Virus record (IMG/VR): IMGVR_UViG_3300042566_001780
Location: 1-64,000 of that record
Strand: one strand, 5' to 3'
DNA length: 64,000 nucleotides
In this document: positions 346 through 56,113 of the stretch, one piece after another
Layout of the letters: the number at the start of each line of letters is the position of its first letter
Numbering within the stretch: position 1 is the stretch's first letter
Translations under genes and position numbers: made by a program
Notes under the pieces: model-generated
Databases searched by the model: none
What the model was told of the DNA's origin: nothing
The model's input: only the letters and a program-made list of their open reading frames with translations

Positions 346-511
346 TGCCCGTGTAGTTGAGTGGTAAAAACAGACACTGAGTTGCAGCAATTCTAGACAT
401 GATGCAACAATGCTTTCATAACACGAAGGTAGTAGATCGGCCGGTTTGCTATCTGATTATGAGAGTGTAAAGGTGGAAGGTCGTGGGTTCGAGTCCCTCC
501 ATGGGTAGCCA
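346..511 (+). ncRNA. tRNA-like RNA with ~85-nt structured insertion replacing the anticodon loop
   Basis: Acceptor (T)GCCCGTG/CATGGGT(A), D arm GTT-GAGTGGTAAA-AAC, stem ACACT(374-378)/AGTGT(464-468), T arm GTGGG-TTCGAGT-CCCTC, terminal GCCA; internal 12-bp hairpin 427-454. Confidence 0.75.
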
Positions 512-652
512 TATCAAAGTGTTCATTGTTAGGTTCCTCTGATTATCCTAAGGTGTCATCAGAGCAGGGTCCTTGGAATTACAAGGAAGAAGAATGAGGA
601 AACTCATTTGGAAGGCAAGTGCAAATCCCCCTGGTGAATTCTTTGATATGGT
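508..652 (+). ncRNA. Putative multi-branched structured RNA between tRNA genes
   Basis: 12-bp closing stem GCCATATCAAAG/CTTTGATATGGT; hairpins 537-564, 570-587 and 593-608 (GAAA tetraloop); no ORF. Confidence 0.55.
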
Positions 653-660
653 TTAAAGAT

Positions 661-737: not shown

Positions 738-742
738 TCAGT

Positions 743-836
743 TTTCCAAAACACATAGTCTCGCCGTTAGGCTAGCATGACGGATTATTGTTAGAGACCT
801 TGCATGATTAGACTTGAGTGCAATGTGTTTTGGGAA
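743..836 (+). ncRNA. Putative pseudoknotted small RNA
   Basis: 14-bp closing stem 743-756/823-836; GTCTC/GAGAC; hairpin 764-783 whose loop CTAGCA can pair with TGTTAG 789-794. Confidence 0.55.
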
Positions 837-847
837 TTATAGTTTTT

Positions 848-924
848 CTGCCCTTGGCGCAACTGAATAGCGCAACTGCCTTCTAAGCAGTAGGTTGTGG
901 GTTTGACTCCCGCAGGGCAGGCCA
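848..924 (+). tRNA. trnR: tRNA-Arg(TCT)
   Basis: CTGCCCT/AGGGCAG acceptor, ACTGC-CTTCTAA-GCAGT anticodon arm, CCA; T loop TTTGACT and D loop lacking GG are non-canonical. Confidence 0.88.
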
Positions 925-1217: not shown

Positions 1218-1630
1218 AAATGGCAAAAGCAAGTAACGCCCCAGCAAAGAAGGTCGTTTTTCAAAGAACAGGTTTGTTCAATGACACCTTCGCAAACTAT
1301 GCAAATAATGCTACTGTGACAGCTAAGTTTGAGGATTTCATTGCCTTCAAGCGTCAGAATCCTCTTTTGCCTTATGGTAGCAAAGACGAACATTTCAAGG
1401 GCAATGGTCCCTTAGGTCAATCTAAAGTTATTCACGTTCACTTAACGCATAACGTCAATTTAATCTATAGTCGTGCCGGCAGTAATCCTATGACTATCAC
1501 TTTAATTTGGATTGGCGTTCATGATGAAATGGGCACAGGGCAACCACCAAATGCAAAGTTGCAAAAGAATGCTGCAGCAAAATTCTTAGCTGCTAAACCA
1601 GAAGGAAAAGTTTTTGAAAATGGAAAATGA
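1214..1630 (+). CDS. RelE/YafQ-like ribosome-dependent mRNA interferase
   Basis: Pattern PYGSKDEHFKG...IHVHL..NVNLIY...ITLIWIGVHDEM resembles YafQ KDHxLxG...CHI..D.LLIY...TGSH. Confidence 0.7.
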   Translation: MKMAKASNAPAKKVVFQRTGLFNDTFANYANNATVTAKFEDFIAFKRQNPLLPYGSKDEHFKGNGPLGQSKVIHVHLTHNVNLIYSRAGSNPMTITLIWIGVHDEMGTGQPPNAKLQKNAAAKFLAAKPEGKVFENGK

Positions 1631-1711
1631 TGTAAGATGGTCTCTTACGACTGCCTGCTAAGCAGTTCGTCCAGTCAAATGGATTCGGTTCGATCCCGAC
1701 GTTTTCCGCCA
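1622..1711 (+). tRNA. trnS: tRNA-Ser(GCT) with 8/4 acceptor/T-stem architecture
   Basis: 8-bp acceptor GGAAAATG/CGTTTTCC, 4-bp T stem TCGG/CCGA, 5-bp D stem GTAAG/CTTAC, anticodon GCT, long variable arm TCCA/TGGA, G73, CCA. Confidence 0.85.
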
Positions 1712-1728: not shown

Positions 1729-2403
1729 ATGAAAAAAGTTATTGAGATTAGGCCTGCTGAAGGCGGTGAAGATTCTAAGTTGTTTGTCAGTGATCTGGCA
1801 AACGCATATGTGAAGTTGTCCATGAAAAAGGGCTGAAAGCACCAGCTGTCAGATTGTGATTCTTACACAACAATCACAATTACTGGTCACGATTTGACAG
1901 CTCTATCTCAAGAAGCCGGTGGTCACAGAATTCAGCGAGTACCGCCAACTGAAAGAAAATGTCGGGTACACACATCAACTGTTACTGTAGCAGTTCTAGA
2001 TGGTGATTCTTTAGTTGGCACAATTGCACTAGATCAAAAAGATCTCAAGCTTGAATGGTATTCTGGTACTGGATGTGGTGGCCAAAATCGTAATAAGGTG
2101 ATGGCTTCTTGTAGATTGACGCACGTTCCAACAGGAATTGTGAAAACGTCCCAAACAAGAAGCCGCGAAACTTCTTATGCTCAAGCATTGACTGCATTAA
2201 CTCAAGCAGTCAATGAAGGTTTGACAAAATCAAAGTTGAGCCAATTCAATCAAATTCGTAAGAATCAGGTTGGAAGTGGCGAACGCGGTGATAAAATAAG
2301 AACTTATCGATTTCAAGATGATTCAGTAAAAGATCATCGCACAAACAAAAGTGCTTCTGTTGCAAAAGTAATGAATGGTCATTTTGACCTTCTTTGGAAA
2401 TAA
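1729..2403 (+). CDS. RF1-type peptide chain release factor homolog lacking domain 1, with in-frame TGA at 1834-1836
   Basis: ATG 1729 with AAGGA RBS gives MKKVIEIRPAEGGEDSKLF..., in frame with GHRIQRVPPTE (PxT), GTGCGGQNRNK (GGQ) and GERGDKIRTYRF; the TGA occupies the conserved Trp position of RF1 (xxGW). Confidence 0.88.
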
Positions 2404-2714: not shown

Positions 2715-3089
2715 ATGAAACTCGAAAACCTCGTTATTGACAAAAAGCCTGATACAAAAGCAGCTACTACTTCTGCTCCAGAGGAAACTCCGGGTGGTGC
2801 CACTGTGATGATCTTGAATGATCCTATCACTCCAGCAGAAGTTGTAGTTGAAGCTATCATGCATGGTACTGGATTGTCGAAACAGGCTGCTATGAAGCGC
2901 ATGATGCGTGCTCATCGTAATGGTTGGGTGCCTATTGCTTCTTATGCTACTAAAGACATTGCTGAAACGATTGCAAACAAAATCGAGCAACACGCTCGAA
3001 ACAATCCGAACTATGACCACTATCGTCCATTTGTTCGTCATAACGGACCTTGGCCGCTAGCTGTTGAAGTAATGGATGCTGAACAATGA
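2715..3089 (+). CDS. clpS: ClpS-like Clp protease adaptor
   Basis: VMILNDPITPAEVVVEAI...MMRAHRNG...YATKDIAETI matches the ClpS core. Confidence 0.85.
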   Translation: MKLENLVIDKKPDTKAATTSAPEETPGGATVMILNDPITPAEVVVEAIMHGTGLSKQAAMKRMMRAHRNGWVPIASYATKDIAETIANKIEQHARNNPNYDHYRPFVRHNGPWPLAVEVMDAEQ

Positions 3090-3658: not shown

Positions 3659-5788
3659 ATGAACAAGCTCTCCATTGCATTTGCAAACAATCTCGCCATC
3701 ATTCCGACCCATGATAATGGCGATACCAAAAATACCGCTCTTGCAATGAGTGTTCAAGCTGAACTAATGAATGTCGGCTTCATGTTGAGCAAAGAAGCTT
3801 TCTCTTATCTTGAGACACGCACTGAGTCTTTCATTGCATCCTTCCATAACGGTATCATTCCTCTTGCAAAATCCGCAAAGGGCGTCACTAGCAAGAAGTA
3901 TTCTCCACTTTGGAAGAACTTCCCAATTGATGTTATGGCTGCATCTGATGCAGAGCTCTACATCACTGCGCTTATCCATTACTGGACTAATGGTACTTGG
4001 TCACCAGACGCGGAGCTGAAGGCTCGCGGTTTTGCTTTTGAAAAGAAAAACTTTATTGAGCTAAAGCTTGCTCCTGAAAATTGGGAGCAAAGTCTTGTCA
4101 ATGATTTGGCGGCTTTCACCAAACCGCTTGATCCCACCAATCTAAATAACCTGGTGTGGCTTGCGCAGAACTGTCAAGTCACCATTCCGGAAGTTTCTGT
4201 CAAAGAAACTATGGCAGCTTTGGCTGTAGCTGGAATTCCAGTGAAGGTGAAATCTCCTGTTGATGTGCTGCGGATTGCAGTCGGCATGTCTGGTGGCGAT
4301 ATGGCTCTCCCTTCTATGCCAAAAATCCCGCAAATGAAGGATAAGAGCTTGATGCGTGGCAGCTACGCATTTAATGCAAAAGTACAAGAAGCTAATGCGT
4401 TGCGTGAAACTTTCAAATTCAAGAAGTTCACTCGAAGCGAACGCCGGTACATCCTTGGATTGCTTGAGTCGCTGAAATTTGTTGATGAAGCAGAAATGCA
4501 GCGTCATCTTGGCCGTTGGGTTCGTCTTGGCGAAGTTCTCCATCCAGGCGAAATGAAGAGCAAGTTTCCAAAAGCAGCAGCTGCATTCTCCAAGATTCGC
4601 AATCAAGAAGAAGTGAAGGTTCGTACCTTTGCTGGTCGTGTTGATCTGGCGTTCAAGCAATCTCCTGATGTTGGTATGCAAGTTCTTCAAGAACGTCCTG
4701 GTGAATTTGCACGTCGTCTTGATGCACTGGTTCGTAATGAAAAGCATGATGCACAGCAGGTGATTGATCGATTTGCAGAAGTTGCAGGCAAAGTGTCGAC
4801 TAAAGTGCTGTTCGAGATGTTTGATCATTTTGAAGGTCGCTTGAAGGACAAGCCGCGTATGGTCATGATCAAGGGTAAAGGTTCCAAGGTTAAGAATCTG
4901 GAAACTCTCCCGAAACTGCCAGATCATATTGTGGAAAATATCCAGAAGATGATCAAGCAACAATTGGCTAATCGCGCTGCAAAGTTGCCAGCAATGGGTA
5001 ATGTGTTTGTTGATGATCAACTGCTGAATATGCCGGTGCCATATTCTATGCAATCCTCTGCAGAGGGTACTTCTACTTTGGTTCGCGGTACTCGCATGCC
5101 AATTGTTGAAGGTGCCAATACACTGCGTGGGTTTGTTCACTGGTATGATGAGAATGGCGATGACGACATTGATTTGTCGGCTACGTTCCTGGGCGCAAAG
5201 TTTGAAATTCTTGGTGAATGTGCATTCTATGATCTGCGGTCCACGAATTTGAAGGCGTATCACTCTGGTGATGTTCGCCATCGTATTGGGCATAATGCAG
5301 AGTACATTGACTTTGATTTGAATTCTGCTAAGGAACATGGTGTCAAGTATGTGGTGTTCTCTGCATACAATTTCAATGGTAATGCCATTAAGTCTGTACC
5401 TGAATGCACCTTTGGCGTGATGGAGCGTTCTAAGCCAAAAAGCAATGAGATCTTTGACCCAGCTACTGCCCCACAAGCTATCAAAGTTCAGGCAAATAGC
5501 AATTCGGTGTTTCCTGTCATGATTGATGTGGAAGCACATGAATGGATTTGGTTGGATCTTGAATCTGAAGGTCGAGGCTTTGCTTCTTTCCATAGTAATT
5601 CTTCTACTCTTGACAAAATCAAGGCATTCACACAACAAGCAAAGTTCAGTGTCTATGATCTGATTTCTCTGCATGTTGGCAGTCGCTCTGGTACCATTGT
5701 GAACAAGATGGAAGATGCTGATCTCATCTATTCGTATGACGACATTGTTCGAAACTATTCGAAACTGACTGAGTTCTTGAACATCTAA
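3659..5788 (+). CDS. ROT/TROVE-like helical protein fused to C-terminal TerD domain (709 aa)
   Basis: Helical N-region with RPGEFARRLDALVR; C-terminal TerD-like segment (W...DDIDLSATF...HSGDVR...AEYIDFDL...YVVFSAYNF); architecture recalled for the Prok-RING_4-associated family, but no RING finger here. Confidence 0.65.
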   Translation: MNKLSIAFANNLAIIPTHDNGDTKNTALAMSVQAELMNVGFMLSKEAFSYLETRTESFIASFHNGIIPLAKSAKGVTSKKYSPLWKNFPIDVMAASDAELYITALIHYWTNGTWSPDAELKARGFAFEKKNFIELKLAPENWEQSLVNDLAAFTKPLDPTNLNNLVWLAQNCQVTIPEVSVKETMAALAVAGIPVKVKSPVDVLRIAVGMSGGDMALPSMPKIPQMKDKSLMRGSYAFNAKVQEANALRETFKFKKFTRSERRYILGLLESLKFVDEAEMQRHLGRWVRLGEVLHPGEMKSKFPKAAAAFSKIRNQEEVKVRTFAGRVDLAFKQSPDVGMQVLQERPGEFARRLDALVRNEKHDAQQVIDRFAEVAGKVSTKVLFEMFDHFEGRLKDKPRMVMIKGKGSKVKNLETLPKLPDHIVENIQKMIKQQLANRAAKLPAMGNVFVDDQLLNMPVPYSMQSSAEGTSTLVRGTRMPIVEGANTLRGFVHWYDENGDDDIDLSATFLGAKFEILGECAFYDLRSTNLKAYHSGDVRHRIGHNAEYIDFDLNSAKEHGVKYVVFSAYNFNGNAIKSVPECTFGVMERSKPKSNEIFDPATAPQAIKVQANSNSVFPVMIDVEAHEWIWLDLESEGRGFASFHSNSSTLDKIKAFTQQAKFSVYDLISLHVGSRSGTIVNKMEDADLIYSYDDIVRNYSKLTEFLNI

Positions 5789-9083: not shown

Positions 9084-10120
9084 TTCCTTTCATCAAACAA
9101 TTCGTCAAAAATAGTAACTAAAGTATTTGGGTCAATTGTGGCCGTAGGAGTAACGCCGTCCTTGATTAATTGACGAACAGTATTATCAAGTTGATCAAGA
9201 GCATCATCCTCAACTTCAAGTCCTTCAGATATTGCTTGCTTTTGATTAACTGCATCCTGTTCAATAACAAACTCTCTCAATTGATACGCTTCAATCATTT
9301 CTGCTTTAAGAGCCTGAACATCAGTATAACCAATATCAATATCAAGTAGACATTTGACGCGAGAACCAGGTTTAAAGTCTGCATTTTCTGCAGCTAATAC
9401 ATGTGATAACCGAGTCTTGTAGAATAATGGGCACTTAGGATAATCATAGAAAATGATGTCTTCAGATTCAGTGTCTAACATAGCAGCACCGCGCTCTGAA
9501 TCACCAGCATCCCCATAGTTTGTTGGGAATGCATTTCCAATGTAAACTACATTACCAGAAAACTGGCGCTTATGAAAATGCCCAGATAAAATGTATCGAG
9601 GACCCGTAAATTGCTTAGCATCTGGACCATGATCAAGAACTTTATCCTGACCAGTCACAACAAAGTTTCTAAATTCAAAATGGCCTAGCACATATTTGTA
9701 AGAGTTAATTTTGGCTGCAAGCTCTGGATACTCTGGATGAAACAAATAAGGAGCAGCATACATCTCTTTATTAATTTCTTGTGGTTCTGATATGATCCTG
9801 AAATTTTTGAAATCAGAAAATGGATCGGTTGAAAAAATATTTCGATTAGATCTGTAAAAAAGATCATGGTTACCAACTATAAAGAAAACTGGCAACCCAA
9901 GATTATCAAGTTTTCTTGCAGCAGCATGGGAAGAATTTAGAGTTCTAACACTGATTTGGTTTCGATTCTCATACCAATCACCCAAAAAAGCAATGTGAGT
10001 AGCTTTTTCGCGAATAGCTAGATCGCAGAACCAATCAATGAACTCATGACAGTCATTCAGATGTTGTTCTGAGTTGAGTCTTGCACCAAAATGAATGTCA
10101 GTAAAGCAAAGTAATTTCAT
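9080..10120 (-). CDS. gp47: Mre11/SbcD/gp47 recombination nuclease
   Basis: Metallophosphoesterase motifs TDIHFG, LGDWY, VGNHD, SGHFH; adjacent to gp46. Confidence 0.92.
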   Translation of the reverse strand: MKLLCFTDIHFGARLNSEQHLNDCHEFIDWFCDLAIREKATHIAFLGDWYENRNQISVRTLNSSHAAARKLDNLGLPVFFIVGNHDLFYRSNRNIFSTDPFSDFKNFRIISEPQEINKEMYAAPYLFHPEYPELAAKINSYKYVLGHFEFRNFVVTGQDKVLDHGPDAKQFTGPRYILSGHFHKRQFSGNVVYIGNAFPTNYGDAGDSERGAAMLDTESEDIIFYDYPKCPLFYKTRLSHVLAAENADFKPGSRVKCLLDIDIGYTDVQALKAEMIEAYQLREFVIEQDAVNQKQAISEGLEVEDDALDQLDNTVRQLIKDGVTPTATIDPNTLVTIFDELFDERK

Positions 10121-29900: not shown

Positions 29901-30300
29901 AGCTTCTTATGATTTACGTAACGGCACTTCTATTAGATATGGTTTTGCAGCAGACCAAATTTTGGCTGATCCTAATTTGATCAAATCAACACTTTTGAAC
30001 ACTATTCTAAATACAAAGTTAACCGAAAAATCTGGTGATCTGGTTTTTGCAGACTATATAACATTCTTAGATTATTCTAATTATGAAGCTTGGTTTGCTA
30101 CTCCTGAATCTACTAGAGCAATATTAACTGATATTTGGAATAAAGCAAAGTCTAGTCAAATCAATGAATTGTTTTTTGCAGTCCTTGAGGACGTAGTTGC
30201 AGCGAATTATGAATTGACAGATATTTTCAAAACGTCTAGATTGAGTGTTCAATCTGTTCGTACAGTGGATACTTTAGCTTACATCCCAACTTATGAATAA
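20914..30300 (+). CDS. Very large baseplate/tail structural protein (3128 aa)
   Basis: Follows gp6; beta-rich; two copies of the tail-protein module RVL.K....NGI.VVS.G.W. Confidence 0.7.
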   Translation: MSNDFSIKYQNMINLIPSQLRNPTVVTIVDNLFNRFLTAEEAIPLYGYVGTPSISTVNLPQIRQLTVERSVNTLLPVYSFKLGTKNHSFTPQDIINKMLVLGASDNQATWLYSQGNNFAPPIDFDKFANFYNYYWIAANVTDSISWNPDLVPEYYCIEKPKEADLDKLNVVTASSGSTALTGSGFFNQIWNLTFTSSTTVTVTATGPLVGFLPNQQIQFFTLKPIPAVPDGGSWPVIEDTIEFKAGRLNQTLIALKIRREPIFDINGDLVQYETFAVNDQFIIDAPFISNIHNLTFTGSTGPKGSIVSVNTLSEYQIISGVTLKKNDRVLIKDNPAFDNGIYVVSEGTWSKAADFNSTTAAAGARVWVQGGSNARNLYTAVQASNGWNWTLTSSNVESNVNDWQQYNFWVSRDDLASLGLTVSDAQQAVRPIIEFKNGIKLNSYVNNGLPADSGIAYTQLKSQINQIPLFDVYHYDGTHANVASGIFFYVEDHTSDIDPALQKRVKFSTGLSKDFIFDHGLYNPSGSTFFYKINNQLKSIWHPGYTEKTVVDTVFAGEGNGTLSVSLSNASPFITQQIWTLTAISATQFSVSGSKNKIVNPPYNVLTVGQPYNYALFSATITNGSIPFSIGDTFTFRVGNLETARYSRLLDTGEICDVCGGFEYDALQIGAWKIPKMFYTNIRGSSGSEVSEGIVNSHLKSILANQPSGALENRAFGGSIKLWSEPVNLFASLMMQRDVTPITLVDLAERQYQNTYLAIISLFQKNVLPFISANGAINTIEKLDIFIDHLLNLRALDEDVKTVLFDSTSPVKGFPPTLPQMGAIPLVSPGLVLDEELGVVALRRHDGSLFPLFNNTQDFLDQFVPPGTSLPQDLAQLLNDVIAQLEVRLFRGISSQQKTYFSLDDVKNALSGPLASYMHKELASWAASNNYDMYGTDYEAGNAFTWNYSFANTNDCASISQSAVPARWFNFLQSHQSSVTGVIPTSRPDLNPWKLVGLANDPGSSWDIYRSQVTPSMLNSGFIDGGSVSVVLYNSSTLQSTSLFGLPIIDGYQCVEGEKILLASEQMARNNGIWVVSSGSWTRDSIALVEGTVVFVVNGQYRNNTRWYLLNDVDSINVDDVNFCQVRQWSDAMWQFIQTSKPNLKISVNPFTDELLPPYVNNGLIIAPYALTNVMPSKASSTYEFGESSPVETAWQRTAEFRYGLVRALFRKDPLGWLSHLWGMEWVTVDNIAYCMSLVTMPTTENLPLHGDVTSAVERQNPFIFASITGPANSSLTVVRDSFTADNKQGWTVFYQNLPIGHLKEGVLYSNITSSGFTFIGLQIEDEGKPFSLGDKFEIQINSLGYSDNVLFIPINRRVMNGFCQIFAFALRQAALSSENAYAMKAYRSWTPNLGYRAGGLVSLDDLKIDASNGDVSSAAFELRLKKSRFAKDSWLHALRIKVAAIGSSYASTNKTFVPASNADDWVFRIEGYNDRYTELSFYELAQDSNYITFNALDKTATKLEWKKYATKVELKTTQLPVTITGLQNVINFLFGYEYKLIEDGWRFDDPTSSSIDAETGRARSWQLEVEKLVDRVFRGINESQGTVINPFLDKVWVDHPTGLLGDFSVTGMFDINADAAIFDIFGTKIAPNEMSVLRQRERSEISSNIPIFSAHIQIDEIEHLFVFNNFAQPSLNDQLLYDPYSGAQIANITLNGRFQGNGTLRPEIGGYFLSDGQLKRNIRASVDGVATMYDANKAFENSTISNHAFALLGFNLKDYLSDLDLTDKSQFNFWRGLVHMKGTNESIDAFLNNGKFADTILDEFWAYKVAEYGDSRSKVFPELKIQSADAIQQFTKLQFDGTTPLLDFTQISSLDEDRWFSIDDISEKTKFETKLVGNYDLSNGVNLIDTSWWAQNAAVPIGWAIYGSAPENSFILAETYYGVNEDLWLANAGAAGSSFFGPDGGWSIGGFNADIDRTKTYRFILPVKRLTEENGTVQFGLTGVANLNTPVEASNGFFISIALPEVDVWYYIVGYVYPVDSIGNTNDGSGLYKIENNQLISTGISFNWHDLLPIRHRAQLSNADEGAQIIFGKPAAHAIDGFEPTLSDIISGQRPIIKLPFIADELVISGAAAKINDTTIQSITPYPSKLNVVGYGPDANSFTPIKLINYADNELVEEISLWHPAAGYHNVTAIESINIISNKDPARYNSSTQVVGNDNYDPLRSWGSKEVGRVWLDTTKLKYVPYYDSTIFDNIEQRLNRWGTLADYGSVDVVEWVESTVPPAEYAAQAVLDLANPDIPNNLKADGTVYGATTYSRNRQWQMRPIAWSYSERPEAAAHTGGMIGSRGSFNADYDAGLFFVEDEFGNGEVILGEGNFADAGITIGMHFGEFEDTPANLRARSENVITAFTKSVYFGEGDNYTVITSGNRFIDASGSLNGLSAKVNIELLPDTTLTGELVLSNRVEVIPIYDTDGITSGKQIVKSYLRARIPGTDQDEEVLVREDQGSVGIQLYAIDTAAVIAGLYEAVNNVEPGKALFKDTLIGTRPLADISNEGDVSFYDLAVYQSWVDGSISNQTMIDYIENVFNPYILSNPTIYENYINNVEIVATEATTIDIEPNQLFTTKFLSLGLTVKLESLSTTTVSVPSTTISQIMVNELSTNRQLRVLDAAKYDVLVAGLGLTYLTNDFTDPASFADDNGTGGIGWRAWNVPTQETLDADSKYPNSSWYPMAGPLSNISTPSITVIQQIAETNGKITLSNSSVIDRYKSVWTDWQSMLDVMIERTSLATGQMVITLPEAIDPSRLSVYINGIAQLAGTYDLQGTSLTINNVIYGHEVTVILRAYSPSNEELEFNPDVEDDLLRASQYKVDYQCVEMPIRDTSGSILTTKYFFWVKNRSFTASKKKLSVKTISEKLRVGPEQYLIFQNIVDKSYYDSVSIFGLSQIVSKDNTFKLRFVRDLTLRDDPNGLDLKDTHTEWALIRPRQRNKIPEALWSKMVDSACGMDLAGNAIPSARRASYDLRNGTSIRYGFAADQILADPNLIKSTLLNTILNTKLTEKSGDLVFADYITFLDYSNYEAWFATPESTRAILTDIWNKAKSSQINELFFAVLEDVVAANYELTDIFKTSRLSVQSVRTVDTLAYIPTYE

Positions 30301-30311
30301 CGAAATGAATT

Positions 30312-33300
30312 ATGGCATCAAATAAAAACACCGTTTATACGAAGGCATTAGTTAGTTTTCTGCTTGATACAAAGCCGTATAGTAGAAAACTAACTGAAAT
30401 CAATGAAATCTATAAACTGGATGAATCCATAAGTGTTTCATTTAGTGATGAATTATTCACGGGTGCTACGCTAAAGTCTGCTTGGCCATATTCATTTTTT
30501 TCAAGTGGTTCTTCATCGCTGCAACCATTAAAGTTCCAGCGTATTAGCAATTACCAAGATTACGGCAAATATGTCAATAATCAACAATTACTAAGTCGTG
30601 GGGCTTTTAAAATTGGCCGAGATGAGAGCGTCAGCCTTAGCATGATTCCTAATACCTATGATCCAAAATCATTATCTGGTATTGGGCTTAAGGATTGCTA
30701 TGTCCAAAAAGAGGGCAATCCTGTTGATGTCCAATACTTAATTGAAGGTATTGATCATTTCTTAAGTAAAGGTAGTTATTCATTTCAAGTAAAACAGATT
30801 ACTGGATCAAATGTATCCGGGACCATTATCAAAACTTATGATGATTTAGATGGTCCATTTCCGACAGATGTTGAGATTACTTTTGAATATGATGAGTTAA
30901 TTTTACTTGGGCCAGTGATTCAAGTTGATAGTAATACTATTCGTGTAACAAACCCAGGTGAAATAAAGGTTTACGGTACGATTAATGGTGGTGCATATAG
31001 CCCGCAATTCACTGAACTGCGCAATGAAGCTATTATTTCTGCAGCGCAACAAGCGGCAGCAAATGCTGCATATGATTTGGATAATCCAAATAGCGCTATT
31101 AATCAAATTTCTAGCATCATGGATGCAATTGATGCTCAGTTGACAATCACGCCAAATACTGAAGCACAAAGGGAAGTTGACTCCATCTTTTCTATTTTAG
31201 AAACACCGAAATTACCTTATTCTTATGCAGATCTAATTGGTGCATTAATTAATGCAAGCACACCAGTAATATCTGGATATGCTTCATGGAATAATGTATC
31301 TCTTAAACTTGAATCTCTTAGCCCAAGAATCTTGTTTAATGATTTCACTGATATGAGCTTGAGAGAATCTGGCAAGCTTAATTATGTCGATATTGTTGAT
31401 GACACTATCCAAATAACTAATATTGATCCAAATATTGATCGTGAAAATTACGAAGAGTTTACAGTAACGGCTATCAGCGACACTCAATTATTAGTGTCGG
31501 GTAGTTTATCAGGTAATATTGGACTTGCAGAATTAGGTTCACGTTTTGAGAGTGATTATCTAAACTTCGACGTGTCTGCAGGAACTAACTTACTTGTGGT
31601 TGGTTCAAAATTTGTACTAACGCCAAGCGCGAAAATTACAGTTTCTAAAAATACTACTGCACAATCATGGTCAGTAATAAAAACTAATCCAATTGCTTAT
31701 TCGCGCCCGGTATATGCATCACCAACTAATGCATATGCAAAAATAATATCGTTAGATGCAAAAGAAGGTCAAATAACATTTTTAGATCAAGATTTTCCAT
31801 CTGGCAAATTAGAACTAGAAGTCATTTCTGCTACCCAAGCCCGGATGTATTGTGAAAATGAGCCTACTTATTCTCCATTAATTACATTCAACACTGTATT
31901 CAATGACGGTCGTCTTGGATTCACTGTTGTAAATGGCACTTTTGCGCCATTGCAAATAGGTGATCGCATCTTAATGCGAGTATTAAATCTTCCTCCAAAT
32001 GTTGAAGGTTTAGATTTGTACTTTGGTTATGATGTTGATGCATATGATGCAAACAATTTAGTTTACAACAATGTGTCATCAGCTATTGAAAACTACCTAA
32101 CAACAATCGACTTTGGTTTTGACAGCAGGTTTATCGGATACGATCTTGCAACATTTAATTTAGTCATTGATGATAATGCAGTTAGCAATAGAGCATGGAG
32201 ATTAAGGGCTCTTGCTGATTTATCAAAACCGCTGTTAATGCCATCTGGGATTGTTAATTTGCTTGGTACAGATGATCCAACAAATCCTACAGCATTTGCA
32301 AAATATGATAGTGATAATGATGCTACATCAGAAGGAATTCAGAGCTCCACTGATTTTGATGATTTAGATGATTTGCAATTGTGGTATGCAAATAGATTTG
32401 CATTAGAATATCAGGATGGGGAAGCCGGCATATGGCAAACAGTGAATGCGAACATTCAAGTAAATCAGCGTTACACTTTTTCTGAATATGGAATAGCTTT
32501 TACTGTCGTTCCAGCAGCAAAACCATTTATTGCATCTAGATCCACATCCACTCAATATGTAAACACCTCTGGCGGATTAGTTACATCAGTGGTTGATGGT
32601 GGCGATATTATCTATTTCAAGATCGTTAATCCAGAACCGAAATTAGAAAATCCAGCATCTATTCTATCCAACACTCCTAGAATGATAATGTATGGAGAGC
32701 ATTTTCATAAATGTCCTTCAGCAAATTGGGTAGTTACGAAAGTCGCAGGAGGCTTCACTCTTCAAGGTAAGTACTCTTCTAATAACATAAATGTCTATTC
32801 AACACCTCTATTTTTATCTTCTGAAGATGGTTTAAGCTATCACATAAAAGAAAACAGTCTGCATTTCACCATAGTTGAAGGTAGAGGAATGGCAGTTGGT
32901 GATACTTTCACCTTCACAACTTTTGAAAATCATGCATCGTTCTTAGTGTATGGATCTGTGACTGGATGGACTGCTCCGGCCAGATTGAATACATGGTATT
33001 GGAATGGACACATCGGCTTCAAGATACGTGCTGCCCAATGCGAATTGTTTGTTGATGGCGAATTACAGTCGACAAATGCTACAAGTTGGGTTACTTCTTA
33101 TGGAAATATTGAGCTTGATTATCTAAAGGAAGATCTATCTGATTCAATTATCAATTTCCAATCATTAGGAAATGGTACTTGGTTAGCATATCGCAATGGT
33201 AATTTACTTGGATCTGGAGTAAATGAAATTGTCATTGATGAATTTGGTATTACTCTGCCAAATGCTCCTGAATCTACAAACATTTCAATGAAGATTCTAG

Positions 33301-45384: not shown

Positions 45385-47603
45385 TTCGCTATTCCTTTTT
45401 TGAATTTCATAAACATTTTGAATAATTCAGGATTTCTGACTCGCTTAATGATCTTTTTGTCATTATTTGCAAATAGCTTAGTTGGCACAGAAGCAATATC
45501 TCCGGCGCTAGTAGATGCGGCATCACCATCTTCCTTAATCTTACTGACTTCAGCAAGCAGATTTAGATTTGAATTTCCCATAATGATATTAGTTTGAATG
45601 TGTTTGAATCTATTTAAGAGTAATGACCGCGGAGTGAATCTTAAAGCATGCATGTATAACTCGCCAAGATATTTGACTTTTTCATCAAATGTCATTTGGT
45701 CCCACCCAAACGCATTTCTAATCAAATAATTCAGCTTTTTAGATCTGAAACCGCTAAAGTCTATTAATTGCTTTATCGTGAAATGATGAGATTTCCAATC
45801 AATCTTACGATTTAAGTCAGTTGACAAATCCATATGCAACATATTCCACCAGAGCTTTGGAATAGGCTGTGTCATTCTTGCTATTACTTTTTCAGCATCA
45901 GAATTTAGAACGCTTTTCACATCTTTTCTATTTGCCGACCATATGATATATCCCCAGTGATTTAAGGGACTCATATCGTAATTCCACTTTTTCAAGTGCA
46001 TGTTCTTTTGATCACGCAACAATCGTCGAGCTTTTGTATCATTCTCTTTAAGAAGAATAATAGACATCATCAAAATGGATAGGTATGAATTTAGAATGTG
46101 AAACCCATCCAAATTCTTTGCATTTTGAAGATCAACTTCGCCATATGAAGAAGCTTTATGCTTTTTAGCTTCCTGAATTGGTGAGTTATCACCAATCAAG
46201 TGACCATACAAAATATCTAATAGTTCTAGCGAATTATTAGTACCTTTGATTTTGTTAAATTGAGATATAAAGCTTTTCCGGGTTTCAGCAAAAATTGTCA
46301 GTGTTTTCTTAAAAACTTCATCAGATAACTTAACTACCTTACCGCTCTTCAACTTTAATTCATATTTGTCTTTGTTTTTCTTAAAGTCATCCAATTTGGA
46401 ATCTAGCTCTTTCTTAGTAGCCGATATCATCAACAAAATTTTTCTTTTTGTTTGCTGAAAGTCTTTAATCTCAAAATAGTTTTCAAGATTGCTTAAGACT
46501 TCTTCCTTAGAGTCTCCGCCAAGCTCTGCTAATTTCTTCTTCATAGTAGCTGCCTTGGCTAGACTTGCTTCACCCAAAAACTTTGCAATTCGAATTCTCA
46601 AATGACCTGTAAGACCACCTTGAGCTTCTAGCGAGGCGTTTTCATCAGTTGTCATAAGTGGACCACGAATAATATCACGCATCGACTGGTTGAATCTATT
46701 GGTAATTAGAAATTCATCCTTATTGACCAACTTAACTTGTTCATTTGTATTTGGATCCCGAAAAACAATACCTTCTAGATTAGCATCACCTAGACTGGAT
46801 TTTAAAGATGCCGATCTGTCAAGCAGCGCGCGTTTAATATCGGCTTTGTATTCAGAATCAATCTTAGCCAAAACTGCAGACCTGGCAGCTTTTACTAACT
46901 CACGTGAGTCAGTTTTTACTGATGAAAGATTAACCGAAGCCAATTCTTTATTTGTGTATTGCTTGATTTCAGACTTTTGATTTAGAAAGTCTTCAAGATC
47001 TTTAAGAGACTTTAAAAGTTGTTCACTCTTAAGTTTTTCCAAATCAATTTTTTGCGGAGATACTATTTGGAATGTAGTGCGGATTTTTTCATCAATCAGT
47101 TCAATACCATCATTAGATGAAACTACTTCAACCTCAGTATCTATCTTTTGGTTAGCTAGAGATGCAGCCAACTCATCTGCCACATTATCTGGAGTACCAG
47201 CAGCACCGCGTAATATGACCAAATAAGAATTGCCAGATCCACCATAGTTGACGGTGTTCGGTTGTGCGCCGAACAAAACTTCTATTTCAACAGTAGCACC
47301 AGGAAATAATACTTTTTTAATATCAGTTTCTATATTTGAAAGGGCTATATGTGCTGCTCTGAATTGATTGAAATCTGCGATTTTGGGCCATTCGTCTGGT
47401 GAATAGTACCTAATTGCTGCCGATCGTTTCCCCTCACGGGAAGTATAAAACTGGCCGTCATCATCTACGCCTATCCAAAGCTGAGCACCATCAACCTTTT
47501 CTAGACCCTTTAAATCTGATAATCGGTTTAGCACAGAAATAAAATCTTCCAATGGAAGATCTTCAATATGGCTAATACCTTCTGACAAAAAAGTTGATGA
47601 CAT
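45381..47603 (-). CDS. Ligase-like nucleotidyltransferase-fold protein (late)
   Basis: Motif I EKVDG, EIE, motif IV EGIVF, VKLVNK; start 47603 fits the late motif 30 nt upstream. Confidence 0.6.
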   Translation of the reverse strand: MSSTFLSEGISHIEDLPLEDFISVLNRLSDLKGLEKVDGAQLWIGVDDDGQFYTSREGKRSAAIRYYSPDEWPKIADFNQFRAAHIALSNIETDIKKVLFPGATVEIEVLFGAQPNTVNYGGSGNSYLVILRGAAGTPDNVADELAASLANQKIDTEVEVVSSNDGIELIDEKIRTTFQIVSPQKIDLEKLKSEQLLKSLKDLEDFLNQKSEIKQYTNKELASVNLSSVKTDSRELVKAARSAVLAKIDSEYKADIKRALLDRSASLKSSLGDANLEGIVFRDPNTNEQVKLVNKDEFLITNRFNQSMRDIIRGPLMTTDENASLEAQGGLTGHLRIRIAKFLGEASLAKAATMKKKLAELGGDSKEEVLSNLENYFEIKDFQQTKRKILLMISATKKELDSKLDDFKKNKDKYELKLKSGKVVKLSDEVFKKTLTIFAETRKSFISQFNKIKGTNNSLELLDILYGHLIGDNSPIQEAKKHKASSYGEVDLQNAKNLDGFHILNSYLSILMMSIILLKENDTKARRLLRDQKNMHLKKWNYDMSPLNHWGYIIWSANRKDVKSVLNSDAEKVIARMTQPIPKLWWNMLHMDLSTDLNRKIDWKSHHFTIKQLIDFSGFRSKKLNYLIRNAFGWDQMTFDEKVKYLGELYMHALRFTPRSLLLNRFKHIQTNIIMGNSNLNLLAEVSKIKEDGDAASTSAGDIASVPTKLFANNDKKIIKRVRNPELFKMFMKFKKGIAK

Positions 47604-47631
47604 GGACTGACCTTGAATTTGTTTCAATTGT

Positions 47632-47639
47632 CTATTTAG
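47632..47639 (-). promoter_or_regulatory. Putative late promoter CTAAATAG
   Basis: Reverse complement CTATTTAG. Confidence 0.65.
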
Positions 47640-47659
47640 ACGTTTTTGGCTCAAATGAC

Positions 47660-47688
47660 AAAAAGGGTGTTCAATGAACACCCTTTTT
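47660..47688 (-). terminator. Intrinsic terminator
   Basis: AAAAGGGTGTTC-AAT-GAACACCCTTTT flanked by A/T runs. Confidence 0.8.
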
Positions 47689-54503: not shown

Positions 54504-56113
54504 TCAAAATTTGAACACGGAATTGATATAGCTTCCTTGCAGCGTTGGCTTTTCAATTCCCATTGCATCAAAGATACCTTCAATTTTTGAGTCAATCAAT
54601 TTTTCTTCTGTTAGCGCCATATCAATCCTGAAGTTTTCGTTGAACCATTGAGGAATATGCATTAAGTCAGAAGGGAATGCGATTGATTTAAGACCGAACT
54701 CATTGGGCATTAAGTAAAAAACGACACCTTTATCACCTGATTTGATCATAGGTGCATCAGGTTGGAATTGAGTAATTAGTTCATTGTAGTTGATTGCTGC
54801 TCTTACATGTCCTGGGAGATTAATCTTCTTATTGTTCTTTTTCTCATTCAACGTCCAATCAGCATACAACTTGTCGAGGTTATTAATCTGCTTAGCGCCG
54901 CCAAGAGCAAGAACATCTTCCGACTTATGAATCAATTTACCACGAGATTCATTGACTAGTTTTTCAATATCTGAATACGGCTTTTTATCAAGAATCAAAT
55001 CCATCAGTTTCTTCAAGAAATCTTGAATGACTTTAGGAGTGTCGGCTTTCTTGATTTCTGAACCCATCGATTTCAGTTTAGGTTTTTCACGAAGATCAAG
55101 ACCTTCTAAGTTGACTACTTTAAGCGTGTACTTTTTCTTTGCAGTCAAGAATAAACCAGTTTCTGCAACTACTTCACGTGCTACCTTAATAAGATCTTCA
55201 CGACCTTCAGTACAGTTGAAACTCTTTTTCATGAATGCTGAGAACATGTCATTCACTGTAGAAGCAACATCATCAGCAATAGTTACAGCATCTTCATAGT
55301 TGTCGACAGGAATGCTGAAATACGCAGAGTCGGTATCAGAATAGATGCACTGAGTGTTTTTCGAATAGTAGAATGCGCCATAGCATGGATGCGCAGTTCC
55401 CTTGTACATTAGCAGTTCGCCAGCCCGCGTTGGGAATTTTTCCAACTCGTTCCATTTGCAATGCTTACGGTATAAAGCTAGATCATCACTTGAAATGACT
55501 GTTTTATATGAAGATCGAGTTTCACCTTCATCAGTAACTGTAGTTACCAAACGAGATGGTGCATAGCGTTTTTCAATAACACACTCTTGACCAGACACTA
55601 ATTCGCCAATAGTCTCATTCATGAAATGCGTAATTTGACGCCCACACCCGGTTACTGATGCGCCAACCTCTCGCCGCCCAAATCTGAAGGCCACGTTAAG
55701 AAGAGAACCGTACGTGCTGTTCCTTAGTGTTACGGTGATATCGTTTCCATATCACCTCTCATTGTTGCCAATGAGAGCAGACTATATCATCATCCACATG
55801 GGATGCCGGGCGCTTCGAGATCACTTGACCCCTACGAGCATATGCTCTAGTCGTTGCACCTTCCGTGTTAGCGGCTTGGCTCAGGATTGTCCACTTGGGA
55901 GTTTCCCTGAATTCACCCGGTTTTCGACAACCATTGCTGATTGAAGGCTCTAAATCAAAGCTGAATTTTTTTCGTAAGCTGTAAAAGATCGTAGTGTTCT
56001 GCTTGTTGAGCAGCATATTGGATCTTTTCATATTCTTCTCGTGTATACAGTTTGCTTCCATCAAGAATCAAACTGCCATTTTTTATTCCTGTTCTAATTT
56101 CATCAATGTTCAT
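54504..56113 (-). CDS. gp43: Family B DNA polymerase C-terminal subunit; exon 1 56113-55958, exon 2 55721-54504
   Basis: Splicing restores motif B LQLTKKIQL|NSTYG; motif C YSDTDS; KKKY; ATG 56113 overlaps the end of the N-terminal gene. Confidence 0.85.
55722..55957 (-). mobile_element. Group I self-splicing intron (236 nt, no homing endonuclease ORF)
   Basis: 5' exon ends in U (GCUU paired with GAGC in P1); intron ends in G; core GGTGAATTCAGGGAAACTC, AATCCTGAGCCAAG, AAGGTGCAACGACT, GATATAGTCT. Confidence 0.92.

What the first reader, a model, noticed from the sequence alone, without database searches (positions are those of the whole stretch)
346..511. 166-nt tRNA-like RNA with the anticodon loop replaced by an ~85-nt structured domain
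It has a normal acceptor stem, D arm, T arm and encoded CCA. Between the anticodon-stem strands (374-378 / 464-468) lies a long insert with hairpins (379-393, 427-454). It is too short for tmRNA or a group I intron, and it lacks the G3-U70 Ala determinant. The acceptor can extend to 8 bp with a G discriminator. Possible roles (inference) are an intron-containing tRNA needing an unusual splicing route, or an elbow/CCA mimic acting as a decoy or scaffold.
Basis: partly seen in the sequence, partly recalled or inferred. Interest (0 to 1): 0.75.

Follow-up and report, generated by a model that had tools for sequence, protein, structure and literature searches.

The report
Anticodon-less tRNA-like RNA in phage
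A large freshwater phage encodes, among its tRNA genes, a conserved RNA with an intact tRNA body whose anticodon loop is replaced by a two-hairpin junction, so it almost certainly cannot read codons; what it does instead is unknown.

Summary
Window 346-511 (+) passes Rfam's tRNA threshold (35.2 bits, cut-off 29) with a ~100-nt insertion in place of the anticodon arm. The insert folds well on the + strand only (z -3.45, against +0.51 on the other strand).

The true anticodon stem is 373-378/472-477, in canonical tRNA register, followed by a 5-nt variable loop (478-482). It opens into a three-way junction with hairpin 1 (381-408) and hairpin 2 (410-468).

Homologues were recovered from other metagenomes: three near-identical haplotypes and a diverged lineage of 180-203 nt. 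They show compensatory changes in the acceptor stem, anticodon stem, hairpin 1 and T stem, and (by hand alignment) in the hairpin-2 apex. Two loop motifs are conserved: AAUUCUAGA, and AUC-GGCC-GGUU.

No anticodon loop can be rebuilt. ARAGORN's "spliced" anticodon differs between homologues (AUG against AGG). There is no ribozyme or group I match, and no splicing endonuclease or RtcB gene.

It is therefore a selected, non-decoding tRNA-like RNA, not a pseudogene and probably not an intron-bearing tRNA. The extra eighth acceptor pair is not conserved.

The function is inferred only: the tRNA body provides processing, stability and mimicry, and the two conserved loops act as the effector. No Rfam family covers it. 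The closest analogue is phage T4 species 1 RNA.

The parts
346..511 (+). The whole tRNA-like RNA (here called TL1). The mature form probably starts at G347 (or U346) and ends at the CCA at 509-511.
   Evidence: Rfam tRNA 35.2 bits. ARAGORN -i. Present with the insert in every relative fetched.
347..353 (+). Acceptor stem, 5' strand. It pairs with 500-506 (G1.U72, C-G, C-G, C-G, G.U, U-A, G-C).
   Evidence: three pairs changed on both sides between the two lineages. G351>A turns G.U into A-U.
356..371 (+). D arm: stem 356-359/368-371 and an 8-nt loop carrying A14, G15, G18, G19 and A21.
   Evidence: Rfam alignment. Read directly from the sequence.
373..378 (+). Anticodon stem, 5' strand. It pairs with 472-477 (G.A, A.G, C-G, A-U, C-G, U.G).
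   Evidence: helix 3 is 100% paired, with two pairs changed on both sides (C-G to U-A, A-U to G-C). The diverged homologues have a perfect UUUGCC/GGCAAA stem. U378>C gives C-G. Model R1 aligns this stem to the anticodon stem of ordinary tRNAs.
381..408 (+). Hairpin 1: stem 381-386/403-408 plus 388-389/400-401, with a 10-nt loop (390-399). The loop motif AAUUCUAGA (389-397) is conserved.
   Evidence: helix 4 has four pairs changed on both sides. The loop motif is identical in the diverged lineage.
410..468 (+). Hairpin 2: outer stem 410-421/457-468; internal loop CACGA/GA (422-426/455-456), which has a k-turn-like pattern; inner stem 427-438/443-454; loop 439-442. The apex AUC-GGCC-GGUU (436-446) is conserved.
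   Evidence: MFE folds. G429>A and G463>A each turn a G.U pair into A-U. Four G.U pairs make the fold strand-specific. The apex hairpin is kept in the diverged lineage, with three pairs changed on both sides by my manual alignment of the sequences.
472..477 (+). Anticodon stem, 3' strand.
   Evidence: As for 373-378.
478..482 (+). 5-nt variable loop AGGUC (tRNA positions 44-48). C482 can form the G15-C48 pair with G361.
   Evidence: Rfam alignment. R1 aligns it to the UAGGUC/AAGGUC of ordinary tRNAs.
483..499 (+). T arm: stem 483-487/495-499 (U484.U498 mismatch in the window) and loop UUCGAGU.
   Evidence: U484>G gives G.U in relatives, and one pair is changed on both sides in the diverged lineage.
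500..511 (+). Acceptor 3' strand (500-506), A507 (position 73), an extra G508, and CCA at 509-511.
   Evidence: Three of the four diverged variants have A73 followed directly by CCA; the fourth (L211) has CUAA.

Best explanation
This is a tRNA-derived but non-decoding RNA, kept by selection in a lineage of large freshwater, soil and wastewater phages.

Shown:
- It lies on the same strand as, and between, the phage's tRNA genes.
- It keeps a complete tRNA core: a 7-bp acceptor stem, a D arm with G18G19, a T arm with UUCGA, a 5-nt variable loop and A73.
- Its anticodon stem (373-378/472-477) does not end in a 7-nt loop. It opens into a three-way junction carrying hairpin 1 (381-408) and hairpin 2 (410-468).
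- All of these helices are maintained in relatives, and two loop motifs at the tip are conserved.

Inferred:
- It is co-transcribed with the neighbouring tRNAs.
- It is cut out by RNase P and 3' trimming, as a tRNA would be, ending in CCA.
- It folds into the tRNA L-shape.
- With no anticodon it cannot read codons.
- The tRNA body serves as a processing and stability handle and as a mimic for tRNA-binding proteins.
- The two conserved loops, placed where the anticodon would be, are the working surface. They could bind a protein or pair with RNA. Both have self-complementary cores (UCUAGA and CGGCCG), so loop-loop self-association is possible.
For: - tRNA model hit above threshold, with the insert exactly in the anticodon-arm position.
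- Strand-specific stable fold of the insert.
It is the constrained minimum-energy fold in two haplotypes.
- Among four near-identical haplotypes from independent metagenomes, none of the 9 variable sites falls on the 74 Watson-Crick-paired bases of the model fixed beforehand (P = 0.004). Five of the changes improve or keep a pair.
- TL1 diverges by 2.4-4.2% from the close relatives, against 6.9% for the upstream ORF and 6-10% for the spacers.
- A diverged lineage (L211, L216-L221; 180-203 nt) was found with the covariance model at 40-48 bits, in the same place upstream of tRNA-Leu(CAA).
- Across the two lineages 11 pairs are changed on both sides and 95% of cells are paired. With the partners slid by 1-3 columns only 0-1 pairs change on both sides and 37-51% of cells pair.
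- The loop motif AAUUCUAGA and the apex AUCGGCCGGUU are conserved while the stems under them change.
- Three of the four diverged variants encode A73-CCA.
Against: - There is no expression, processing or aminoacylation data. No RNA run was shown to hold it.
- The covariation rests on only two lineages, so one event per pair, and on an alignment fitted to the model.
- Most of hairpin 2 is rearranged in the diverged lineage, including a duplication in L216, so only its apex is comparable.
- The window copy has blemishes: G.A and A.G at the base of the anticodon stem, a U.U in the T stem, and an extra G before the CCA.
- No partner protein or target RNA was identified.
- The reverse complement of the hairpin 1 loop has no excess of matches in the window.
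Confidence: 0.55

Rival explanations
1. It is an intron-containing tRNA. The ~78-93-nt insert would be removed by an unknown bacterial or phage route, for example nuclease cuts followed by the phage's T4 Rnl1-like ligase, to give a decoding tRNA.
For: - ARAGORN -i finds a 5-bp stem ACACU/AGUGU and the loop UUAUGAG.
- The phage encodes an Rnl1-like RNA ligase and two further RNA-ligase-family proteins.
- In related and unrelated large phages, other tRNA genes carry 28-47-nt inserts whose removal leaves perfect anticodon loops: Arg-UCU in L149, Arg-CCU in G001, Asn-GUU in SCTP-2.
Against: - ARAGORN's stem excludes the far more stable outer stem of hairpin 2, loses a pair in two haplotypes, and leaves an unnatural unpaired 14-nt variable region.
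- In the diverged homologues ARAGORN calls a different anticodon (AGG, Pro) at a different intron position, so no decoding identity is conserved.
- In the conserved register no loop with U33 can be assembled in either lineage (my reading of the sequences).
- No group I or small-ribozyme hit at E up to 10.
- No splicing endonuclease and no RtcB.
- A normal tRNA-His(GUG) already exists in the genome.
- The loop motifs inside the supposed intron are the most conserved part of it.
Confidence: 0.12
2. It is a dead tRNA gene disrupted by an insertion, drifting without function.
For: - Found only in one phage lineage. There were no matches in IMG/VR, the JGI metagenomes, GTDB genomes or cultured phages.
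- The window copy has mismatches in the anticodon and T stems and an irregular 3' end (A-G-CCA).
Against: - Substitutions avoid all Watson-Crick positions (P = 0.004).
- Compensatory changes occur in four helices between the lineages.
- Loop motifs are conserved over changed stems.
- It diverges less than the flanking ORF and spacers.
- Relatives repair the U.U mismatch to G.U.
Confidence: 0.08
3. It is a processing signal only, like the t-elements of plant mitochondria. The tRNA-like body would recruit RNase P to cut the polycistronic transcript just after the upstream small ORF (134-337, ending 8 nt before the RNA). The RNA itself would have no further role.
For: - A small ORF ends a few bases upstream of the RNA in the window and in L211; in L216-L221 a further, possibly spurious, 76-aa ORF call lies between them.
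- tRNA-like processing elements without decoding function are known (PMC1920247, listed; I did not read that paper, so what it shows is from my own knowledge).
Against: Such a role needs only the acceptor and T arms. It does not explain selection on the D arm, the anticodon stem and hairpin 1, or the conserved loop motifs.
Confidence: 0.12
4. It is a tmRNA-like or suppressor-like translation factor. Either the tRNA-like end is charged and enters stalled ribosomes, or hairpin 1's conserved UUCUAGA acts as a CUA (amber) anticodon loop.
For: - The conserved heptamer UUCUAGA fits the Y-U-NNN-R-N pattern of an anticodon loop, with CUA as the anticodon.
- An open frame of 28 codons runs through the insert (my reading of the sequence).
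- The neighbouring genes are a truncated RF1-like protein and ClpS.
- The phage has a separate tRNA(CUA).
Against: - No G3-U70, and no tmRNA call by ARAGORN -m or Rfam.
- The loop is 10-13 nt rather than 7, and sits about 9 bp further from the core than a real anticodon.
- An open frame of that length is expected by chance.
- 3 of the 4 substitutions in that frame change the amino acid.
Confidence: 0.05

Closest known systems
Phage T4 species 1 RNA (rnaC, 139 nt; NC_000866 70908-71046)
   Same: A stable small RNA of unknown function encoded in a phage tRNA cluster, with a canonical T arm next to a terminal stem formed by its 5' and 3' ends.
   Different: - No detectable sequence homology was noted in the searches made.
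- T4 rnaC misses the tRNA model and gets only 17.5 bits against tRNA-Sec, with no clear D arm.
- The present RNA keeps the whole tRNA core and passes the tRNA threshold.
Ordinary phage tRNAs (the best body matches are tRNA-Thr(UGU)-like)
   Same: The acceptor, D and T arms, the variable loop AGGUC and A73 align column by column. The anticodon stem is in the same register.
   Different: The 7-nt anticodon loop is replaced by a 93-nt three-way junction, so there is no anticodon.
Engineered tRNA scaffolds for recombinant RNA (Ponchon and Dardel; PMC3401473, listed; I did not read that paper, so what it shows is from my own knowledge)
   Same: A foreign structured RNA is grafted onto the anticodon stem of a tRNA, so that the cell processes and stabilises it as a tRNA.
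   Different: That is a laboratory design. This would be a natural, conserved counterpart, and that it works the same way is inference.
Bacterial Y RNAs (YrlA) with a tRNA-like module
   Same: A tRNA mimic joined through its 'anticodon stem' to a further helical domain. Y RNAs are known in some large phages (PMC7824862).
   Different: - The topology is permuted: in YrlA the termini lie in the Ro-binding stem, here they lie in the acceptor stem.
- No Rfam Y RNA hit.
- No Ro/TROVE gene in the phage record.
tmRNA
   Same: It has a tRNA-like acceptor/T domain and lacks an anticodon.
   Different: No G3-U70, no pseudoknots, no recognised tag frame, and less than half the usual size. Not called by ARAGORN or Rfam.

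Membership tests
tRNA (Rfam RF00005) | Cloverleaf core: 7-bp acceptor stem, D arm with G18G19, T arm with UUCRA, variable loop | tested here: met
   35.2 bits against a gathering score of 29, model positions 1-71. The homologue in L149 scores 36.5 bits.
tRNA (Rfam RF00005) | 5-bp anticodon stem closed by a 7-nt loop with U33 and an anticodon | tested here: not met
   The stem is present (373-378/472-477), but it opens into a 93-nt junction. The covariance model has to insert 105 nt. No consistent anticodon is found among the homologues.
tRNA with a group I intron | Intron with the group I catalytic core (P3-P9), usually more than 200 nt | tested here: not met
   No RF00028 hit in 250-1000 at E up to 10. 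The same model does find a true group I intron at 55758-55967. The insert is only about 93 nt.
tRNA with an archaeal-type (bulge-helix-bulge) intron | Bulge-helix-bulge motif at the exon-intron junctions, and a splicing endonuclease plus RtcB-type ligase | tested here: not met
   The folds show no 3-nt/4-bp/3-nt motif. PF01974 and PF01139 are absent from the phage record. The neighbouring genes are of bacterial type: an RF1-like protein and ClpS in the window, and a sigma-70-like factor in the relative L149.
tmRNA | G3-U70 alanine determinant, tag reading frame, pseudoknots | tested here: not met
   Position 3:70 is C349-G504. ARAGORN -m finds no tmRNA. No Rfam tmRNA hit.
tRNA-Sec / allo-tRNA (8/5 or 9/4 acceptor/T geometry) | Conserved 8- or 9-bp acceptor stem, long variable arm arising from the variable region, G73 | tested here: not met
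   The eighth pair U346-A507 exists only in the window lineage and is C.A in the diverged lineage. The 3' end there is A73-CCA. The long hairpin arises from the anticodon stem, not the variable region, which is 5 nt.
Y RNA / YrlA | Ro-binding terminal stem, and an associated Ro (TROVE) protein | tested here: not met
   No Rfam hit. PF05731 is absent from the record. A host-encoded Ro cannot be excluded.
k-turn motif (internal loop of hairpin 2) | 3-nt bulge followed by tandem sheared G.A/A.G pairs between two helices; bound by L7Ae-family proteins | tested here: inconclusive
   - The pattern CAC-GA / GA at 422-426/455-456 fits.
- G455 is C in one haplotype.
- The region is rearranged in the diverged lineage.
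- There is no L7Ae gene in the phage record.
Type II tRNA(UAU) family of uncultured phages (L010-L026) | ~95 nt, anticodon loop CUUAUAY, variable arm with invariant loop CAGAUUA | tested here: inconclusive
   The family profile's best hit in the genome is 347-369 (E 0.025), then 476-507 (E 0.59). The body resembles tRNA-Thr just as well. Neither the anticodon loop nor the variable arm is retained.

The most novel reading that the evidence does not exclude
This would be the first characterised member of a wider, unannotated class of phage 'anticodon-less tRNAs'. These are natural tRNA scaffolds that enter tRNA pathways (RNase P, CCA addition, perhaps aminoacylation) and use a grafted RNA domain for something other than decoding. 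One candidate role is as a harmless decoy or sponge for host defences that attack tRNA acceptor ends. Another is as a partner of the neighbouring truncated RF1-like and ClpS proteins in controlling translation or proteolysis. Similar unannotated elements in the cultured phages XacN1 and SCTP-2 would make the class testable.
Probability: 0.15. Interest if true: 0.85.

Novelty: new variant of a known kind. Interest (0 to 1): 0.62.

Why it matters
Phage tRNA clusters are usually read only as codon-supply or anti-nuclease devices. The non-tRNA RNAs inside them, such as T4 species 1 and 2, have stayed unexplained for about fifty years.

Here there is a clear case with comparative support. A complete tRNA body has had its anticodon loop exchanged for a conserved three-way junction. 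That shows selection for a tRNA-shaped RNA that does not decode.

If it acts as a mimic, decoy or scaffold, it opens a new layer of phage-host conflict or regulation around the translation machinery. It would also be a natural precedent for the engineered tRNA scaffold.

Standard annotation misses such genes. ARAGORN's default run skipped this one, and GenBank records of cultured large phages leave comparable elements unannotated.

Tried and rejected
- **Known RNA families.** Rfam at gathering score and at E up to 10 found only the tRNA model.
- **DNA searches for relatives.**
  - Cultured phages: only T-arm-sized matches.
  - Exact motifs in IMG/VR, JGI metagenomes and GTDB genomes: none.
  - Four GTDB hits to a gapped motif were chance; the covariance model found nothing there.
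- **Gapped pattern** (D arm, 100-130 nt, T loop). It gave mostly adjacent tRNA pairs. Filtering by acceptor complementarity left no homologue.
- **Relatives found through the RF1-like protein in IMG/VR** (59-64% identity). These have large tRNA arrays but no homologue.
- **Covariance model R1 on the XacN1, Xoo-sp13, SCTP-2 and LR745208 genomes.** Only ordinary tRNAs matched.
- **Repeat or mobile-element idea.** The insert has no other copy in the 291.7-kb record.
- **Antisense target for the hairpin 1 loop.** No excess of matches.
- **Eight-bp acceptor / tRNA-His or tRNA-Sec idea.** Dropped because the eighth pair is not conserved.
- **tmRNA idea.** Dropped.
- **Y RNA idea.** Dropped.
- **Descent from the type II tRNA(UAU) family.** Suggestive only.
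- **The 709-aa neighbour as an RNA enzyme.** It looks TerD-like and is unrelated to RNA.
- **Public reads.** Only DNA contigs of four metagenomes were laid. They show the locus, with its insert, well conserved: 2-3 differences over 150-230 nt. No contig lacked the insert. There was no RNA evidence.

Full report
**Setting.** The window is the first 64 kb of a 291,687-bp phage record with 39.7% G+C, classed as linear and about 82% complete.
- It has no close relative among cultured phages.
- Public runs holding near-identical words come from lake, fresh, ground and waste water, soil and biofilm metagenomes.
- The finding lies in a tRNA island, all on the + strand. In order: tRNA-Asn (29-105), a 67-aa ORF (134-337), the finding (346-511), a spacer, tRNA-Leu-CAA (661-737), a spacer, tRNA-Arg-UCU (848-924), tRNA-Ser, a truncated RF1-like gene (1894-2403), a ClpS gene (2715-3089) and tRNA-Cys.
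- In a close relative, the DNA upstream of the point where this record starts also carries a CCA-adding-enzyme-like gene, a PF01171 (ATP_bind_3) gene, which I take to be TilS-like, a sigma-70-like gene and many more tRNAs.

**Checking the observation.**
- Rfam's tRNA model matches 347-507 at 35.2 bits (gathering score 29). It aligns the acceptor, D and T arms and a variable loop AGGUC, and inserts 105 nt where the anticodon arm belongs.
- ARAGORN misses it by default. With introns allowed it as 'tRNA-His(atg)' with a 78-nt intron.
- The tertiary-contact bases of a tRNA are in place: U8, A14, G15 with C48, G18G19, A21 and U54-U55-C56 (read).
- The insert folds to -31.1 kcal/mol (z -3.45; 0 of 200 shuffles fold as well). 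Its reverse complement reaches only -15.5 kcal/mol (z +0.51). This is an RNA-level structure on the + strand, helped by several G.U pairs.

**The inner wiring.**
- That excludes the outer stem of the long hairpin (410-421/457-468) and costs about 9 kcal/mol: -39.0 against -48.1.
- In the register set by the 5-nt variable loop 478-482, the anticodon stem is 373-378/472-477 (G.A, A.G, C-G, A-U, C-G, U.G).
- From it spring hairpin 1 (381-408) and hairpin 2 (410-468), joined by GA, A and AAA.
- My covariance model R1 aligns this stem to the anticodon stem of ordinary tRNAs. The best body matches are tRNA-Thr-like.

**Close relatives.** The upstream ORF led to contigs from ENA and Logan assemblies that are 89-95% identical overall. 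These are L149-L158 and L184-L186.
- All carry the RNA with its insert, in three further haplotypes.
- There are nine variable sites.
- Five lie in stems, and all five keep or improve pairing: G351>A, G429>A, G463>A, U484>G and U378>C.
- Four lie in loops or mismatches.
- None of the nine falls on the 74 Watson-Crick-paired bases of the model fixed before looking at the variation (hypergeometric P = 0.004).
- The RNA diverges less (2.4-4.2%) than the upstream ORF (6.9%) or the spacers (6-10%). That is in the range of the flanking tRNAs.

**A diverged lineage.** I walked outwards through an 80%-identical RF1-like protein and its neighbours. Model R1 then found homologues of 180, 190 and 203 nt at 40-48 bits (L211:366-555, L217:942-1121, L219:1754-1933, L216:2025-2227), again just upstream of tRNA-Leu(CAA).
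- They have acceptor stem GGCCUCG/CGAGGUC, then A73.
- CCA follows A73 directly in three of the four variants.
- The anticodon stem is a perfect UUUGCC/GGCAAA in my register.
- The variable loop is AAGUU, and the T arm is normal.

On the model-fitted alignment of seven sequences:
- 95% of cells pair.
- 11 pairs are changed on both sides: acceptor 3, anticodon stem 2, hairpin 1 4, T stem 1, base of hairpin 2 1.
- With the partners slid by 1-3 columns, only 0-1 pairs change on both sides and 37-51% of cells pair.

Further points on this comparison:
- The hairpin 1 loop keeps AAUUCUAGA over a completely different stem.
- The hairpin 2 apex keeps AUC-GGCC-GGUU, with three compensated pairs beneath it (my manual alignment of the sequences).
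- The rest of hairpin 2 is rebuilt in this lineage. It is branched, and has a tandem duplication in L216.
- Caveats: there are only two lineages, so each covarying pair is a single event, and the alignment leans towards the model.

**What it is not.**
- *Not tmRNA.* Position 3:70 is C-G, and neither ARAGORN nor Rfam calls one.
- *Not group I or a small ribozyme.* Nothing at E up to 10, although the same scan finds a real group I intron at 55758-55967.
- *Not an archaeal-type intron.* There is no bulge-helix-bulge, and no endonuclease or RtcB gene.
- *Not tRNA-Sec-like or tRNA-His-like.* The eighth acceptor pair is not conserved.
- *Not a Y RNA.* No Rfam hit and no Ro gene.
- *Not a repeated element.* The genome has no second copy.
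- *Splicing is unlikely.* ARAGORN's forced solutions give AUG in one lineage and AGG in the other, at different intron positions. In the conserved register no U33-containing loop can be assembled. The phage does encode a T4 Rnl1-like ligase and two further RNA-ligase-family proteins, so an unknown cut-and-ligate route cannot be excluded.

**Mechanism.**
- *Shown:* a tRNA-shaped RNA gene under purifying selection, without an anticodon loop, and with two conserved loops at its distal end.
- *Inferred:* co-transcription with the tRNAs. A TGnTATAAT-like extended -10 motif sits at 1-9, just before tRNA-Asn, and is kept in relatives.
- *Inferred:* RNase P and 3' maturation, an L-shaped fold, and no decoding.
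- *Inferred:* the tRNA body acts as handle and mimic, and the loops as effector.
- Both conserved loops have self-complementary cores (UCUAGA, CGGCCG). This would allow loop-loop pairing between molecules, or recognition by a dimeric protein. That is conjecture.
- The internal loop CAC-GA/GA of hairpin 2 has a k-turn pattern, but it is not conserved.

**Comparison with the known.** The nearest precedent is T4 species 1 RNA: a stable 139-nt RNA in the T4 tRNA cluster with a canonical T arm and a terminal stem, of unknown function. The present RNA differs in keeping the entire tRNA core. Functionally it resembles the engineered tRNA scaffold, in which an RNA is grafted onto the anticodon stem. 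No Rfam family covers it.

**A wider pattern, only partly followed.** Long tRNA-model hits with the anticodon region replaced or interrupted occur in several places:
- in the close relative (a second element, L149:8146-8260, 115 nt; an Arg-UCU-like gene with a 28-nt insert that forms a long anticodon hairpin);
- in other uncultured large phages (G001:40125-40245; G005:7728-7843);
- unannotated, in the cultured phages XacN1 (30282-30387) and SCTP-2 (298729-298847).

Some of these look like true interrupted tRNAs, because a perfect anticodon loop remains once the insert is removed. Others look like anticodon-less mimics.

**Verdict.** The finding is real, is selected, and is not explained by any curated family. 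The anticodon stem it proposed, the eight-bp acceptor and the intron reading do not.

Noticed in passing
window 512-660 and 738-847 (+): Both spacers between the tRNA genes fold into closed, multi-branched structures (z -3.1 and -2.8; 0 of 200 shuffles fold as well). In 512-660 the changes seen in relatives fall in loops or turn U.G into C-G (526). These may be further non-coding RNAs of the tRNA operon.
   Followed up: partly
window 55758-55967 (-): A group I catalytic intron (Rfam 85.2 bits). A second group I hit lies in the relative at L149:5679-5879. The host genes were not examined.
   Followed up: no
window 1894-2403 (+) and 2715-3089 (+): A 169-aa protein made only of the end of the PCRF domain plus the RF-1 (GGQ) domain, followed by a ClpS-like adaptor. 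The truncated RF1-like protein belongs to a very large family of 165-225-aa proteins (3033 hits at E <= 1e-20), many of them on phage contigs.
   Followed up: partly
G000:C1:141916-141992 (outside the window): A tRNA with anticodon CUA (amber suppressor) in the same phage. Whether the phage recodes TAG was not examined.
   Followed up: no
L149:8146-8260: A second tRNA-like RNA (115 nt, Rfam tRNA 44.9 bits) in the close relative, lying upstream of where this record starts. It has a normal acceptor stem, D arm, T arm and G73-CCA, but two hairpins in place of the anticodon arm. Its acceptor stem GGGAAUG/CAUUCCC is shared with an unannotated element of phage XacN1 (AP018399 30282-30387).
   Followed up: partly
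L149:10708-10813 (the position of window 848-924): Where the window has a normal tRNA-Arg(UCU), the relatives have a different Arg(UCU)-like gene. It carries a 28-nt insert after the anticodon that folds the anticodon into a 17-bp extended hairpin.
   Followed up: partly
L149:7846-7932 and 9560-9643: tRNA-Thr(UGU) of 87 nt and tRNA-Gly(UCC) of 84 nt, each with an extra stem-loop in the variable region. That is unusual for these amino acids.
   Followed up: no
L010-L026, L001:5658-5752; MN047793 (Xoo-sp13) 47563-47661: A conserved family of ~95-nt phage tRNAs with anticodon UAU and a long variable arm whose 7-nt loop CAGAUUA is invariant across the 11 distinct IMG/VR sequences aligned; the stems covary. 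An unannotated member (loop CAGAUAA) sits in the cultured phage Xoo-sp13. No match at E <= 1e-5 in the cultured-phage collection by blastn.
   Followed up: partly
G001:C1:40125-40245; MF360958 (SCTP-2) 298729-298847: Two unrelated large phages have tRNA genes (Arg-CCU, Asn-GUU) whose anticodon loop is interrupted by a 45-47-nt insert. The insert itself looks like an acceptor-stem-plus-T-arm minihelix. Removing it leaves a perfect anticodon loop.
   Followed up: partly
window 1622-1711 (+): ARAGORN calls a 90-nt tRNA-Ser(GCU), but it is absent from the Rfam tRNA hits, both at gathering score and in the genome-wide scan. The same is true of ARAGORN's 85-nt tRNA-Glu at G000:165220-165304.
   Followed up: no
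G000:C1:280603-281769, 162243-162704, 126120-126638: One T4 Rnl1-like RNA ligase and two further RNA-ligase-family (PF09414) proteins, which suggests a tRNA repair capacity.
   Followed up: partly
L216:2025-2227: In one variant of the diverged lineage, a ~26-nt segment of the second hairpin domain is tandemly duplicated (203 nt in all). That part of the RNA is evolving quickly.
   Followed up: no
window 3659-5788 (+): A 709-aa protein conserved in XacN1, Xoo-sp13, SCTP-2 and other large phages. It has no Pfam hit. Its nearest ESM Atlas clusters are named TerD-family proteins and are linked to prokaryotic RING-domain proteins.
   Followed up: partly
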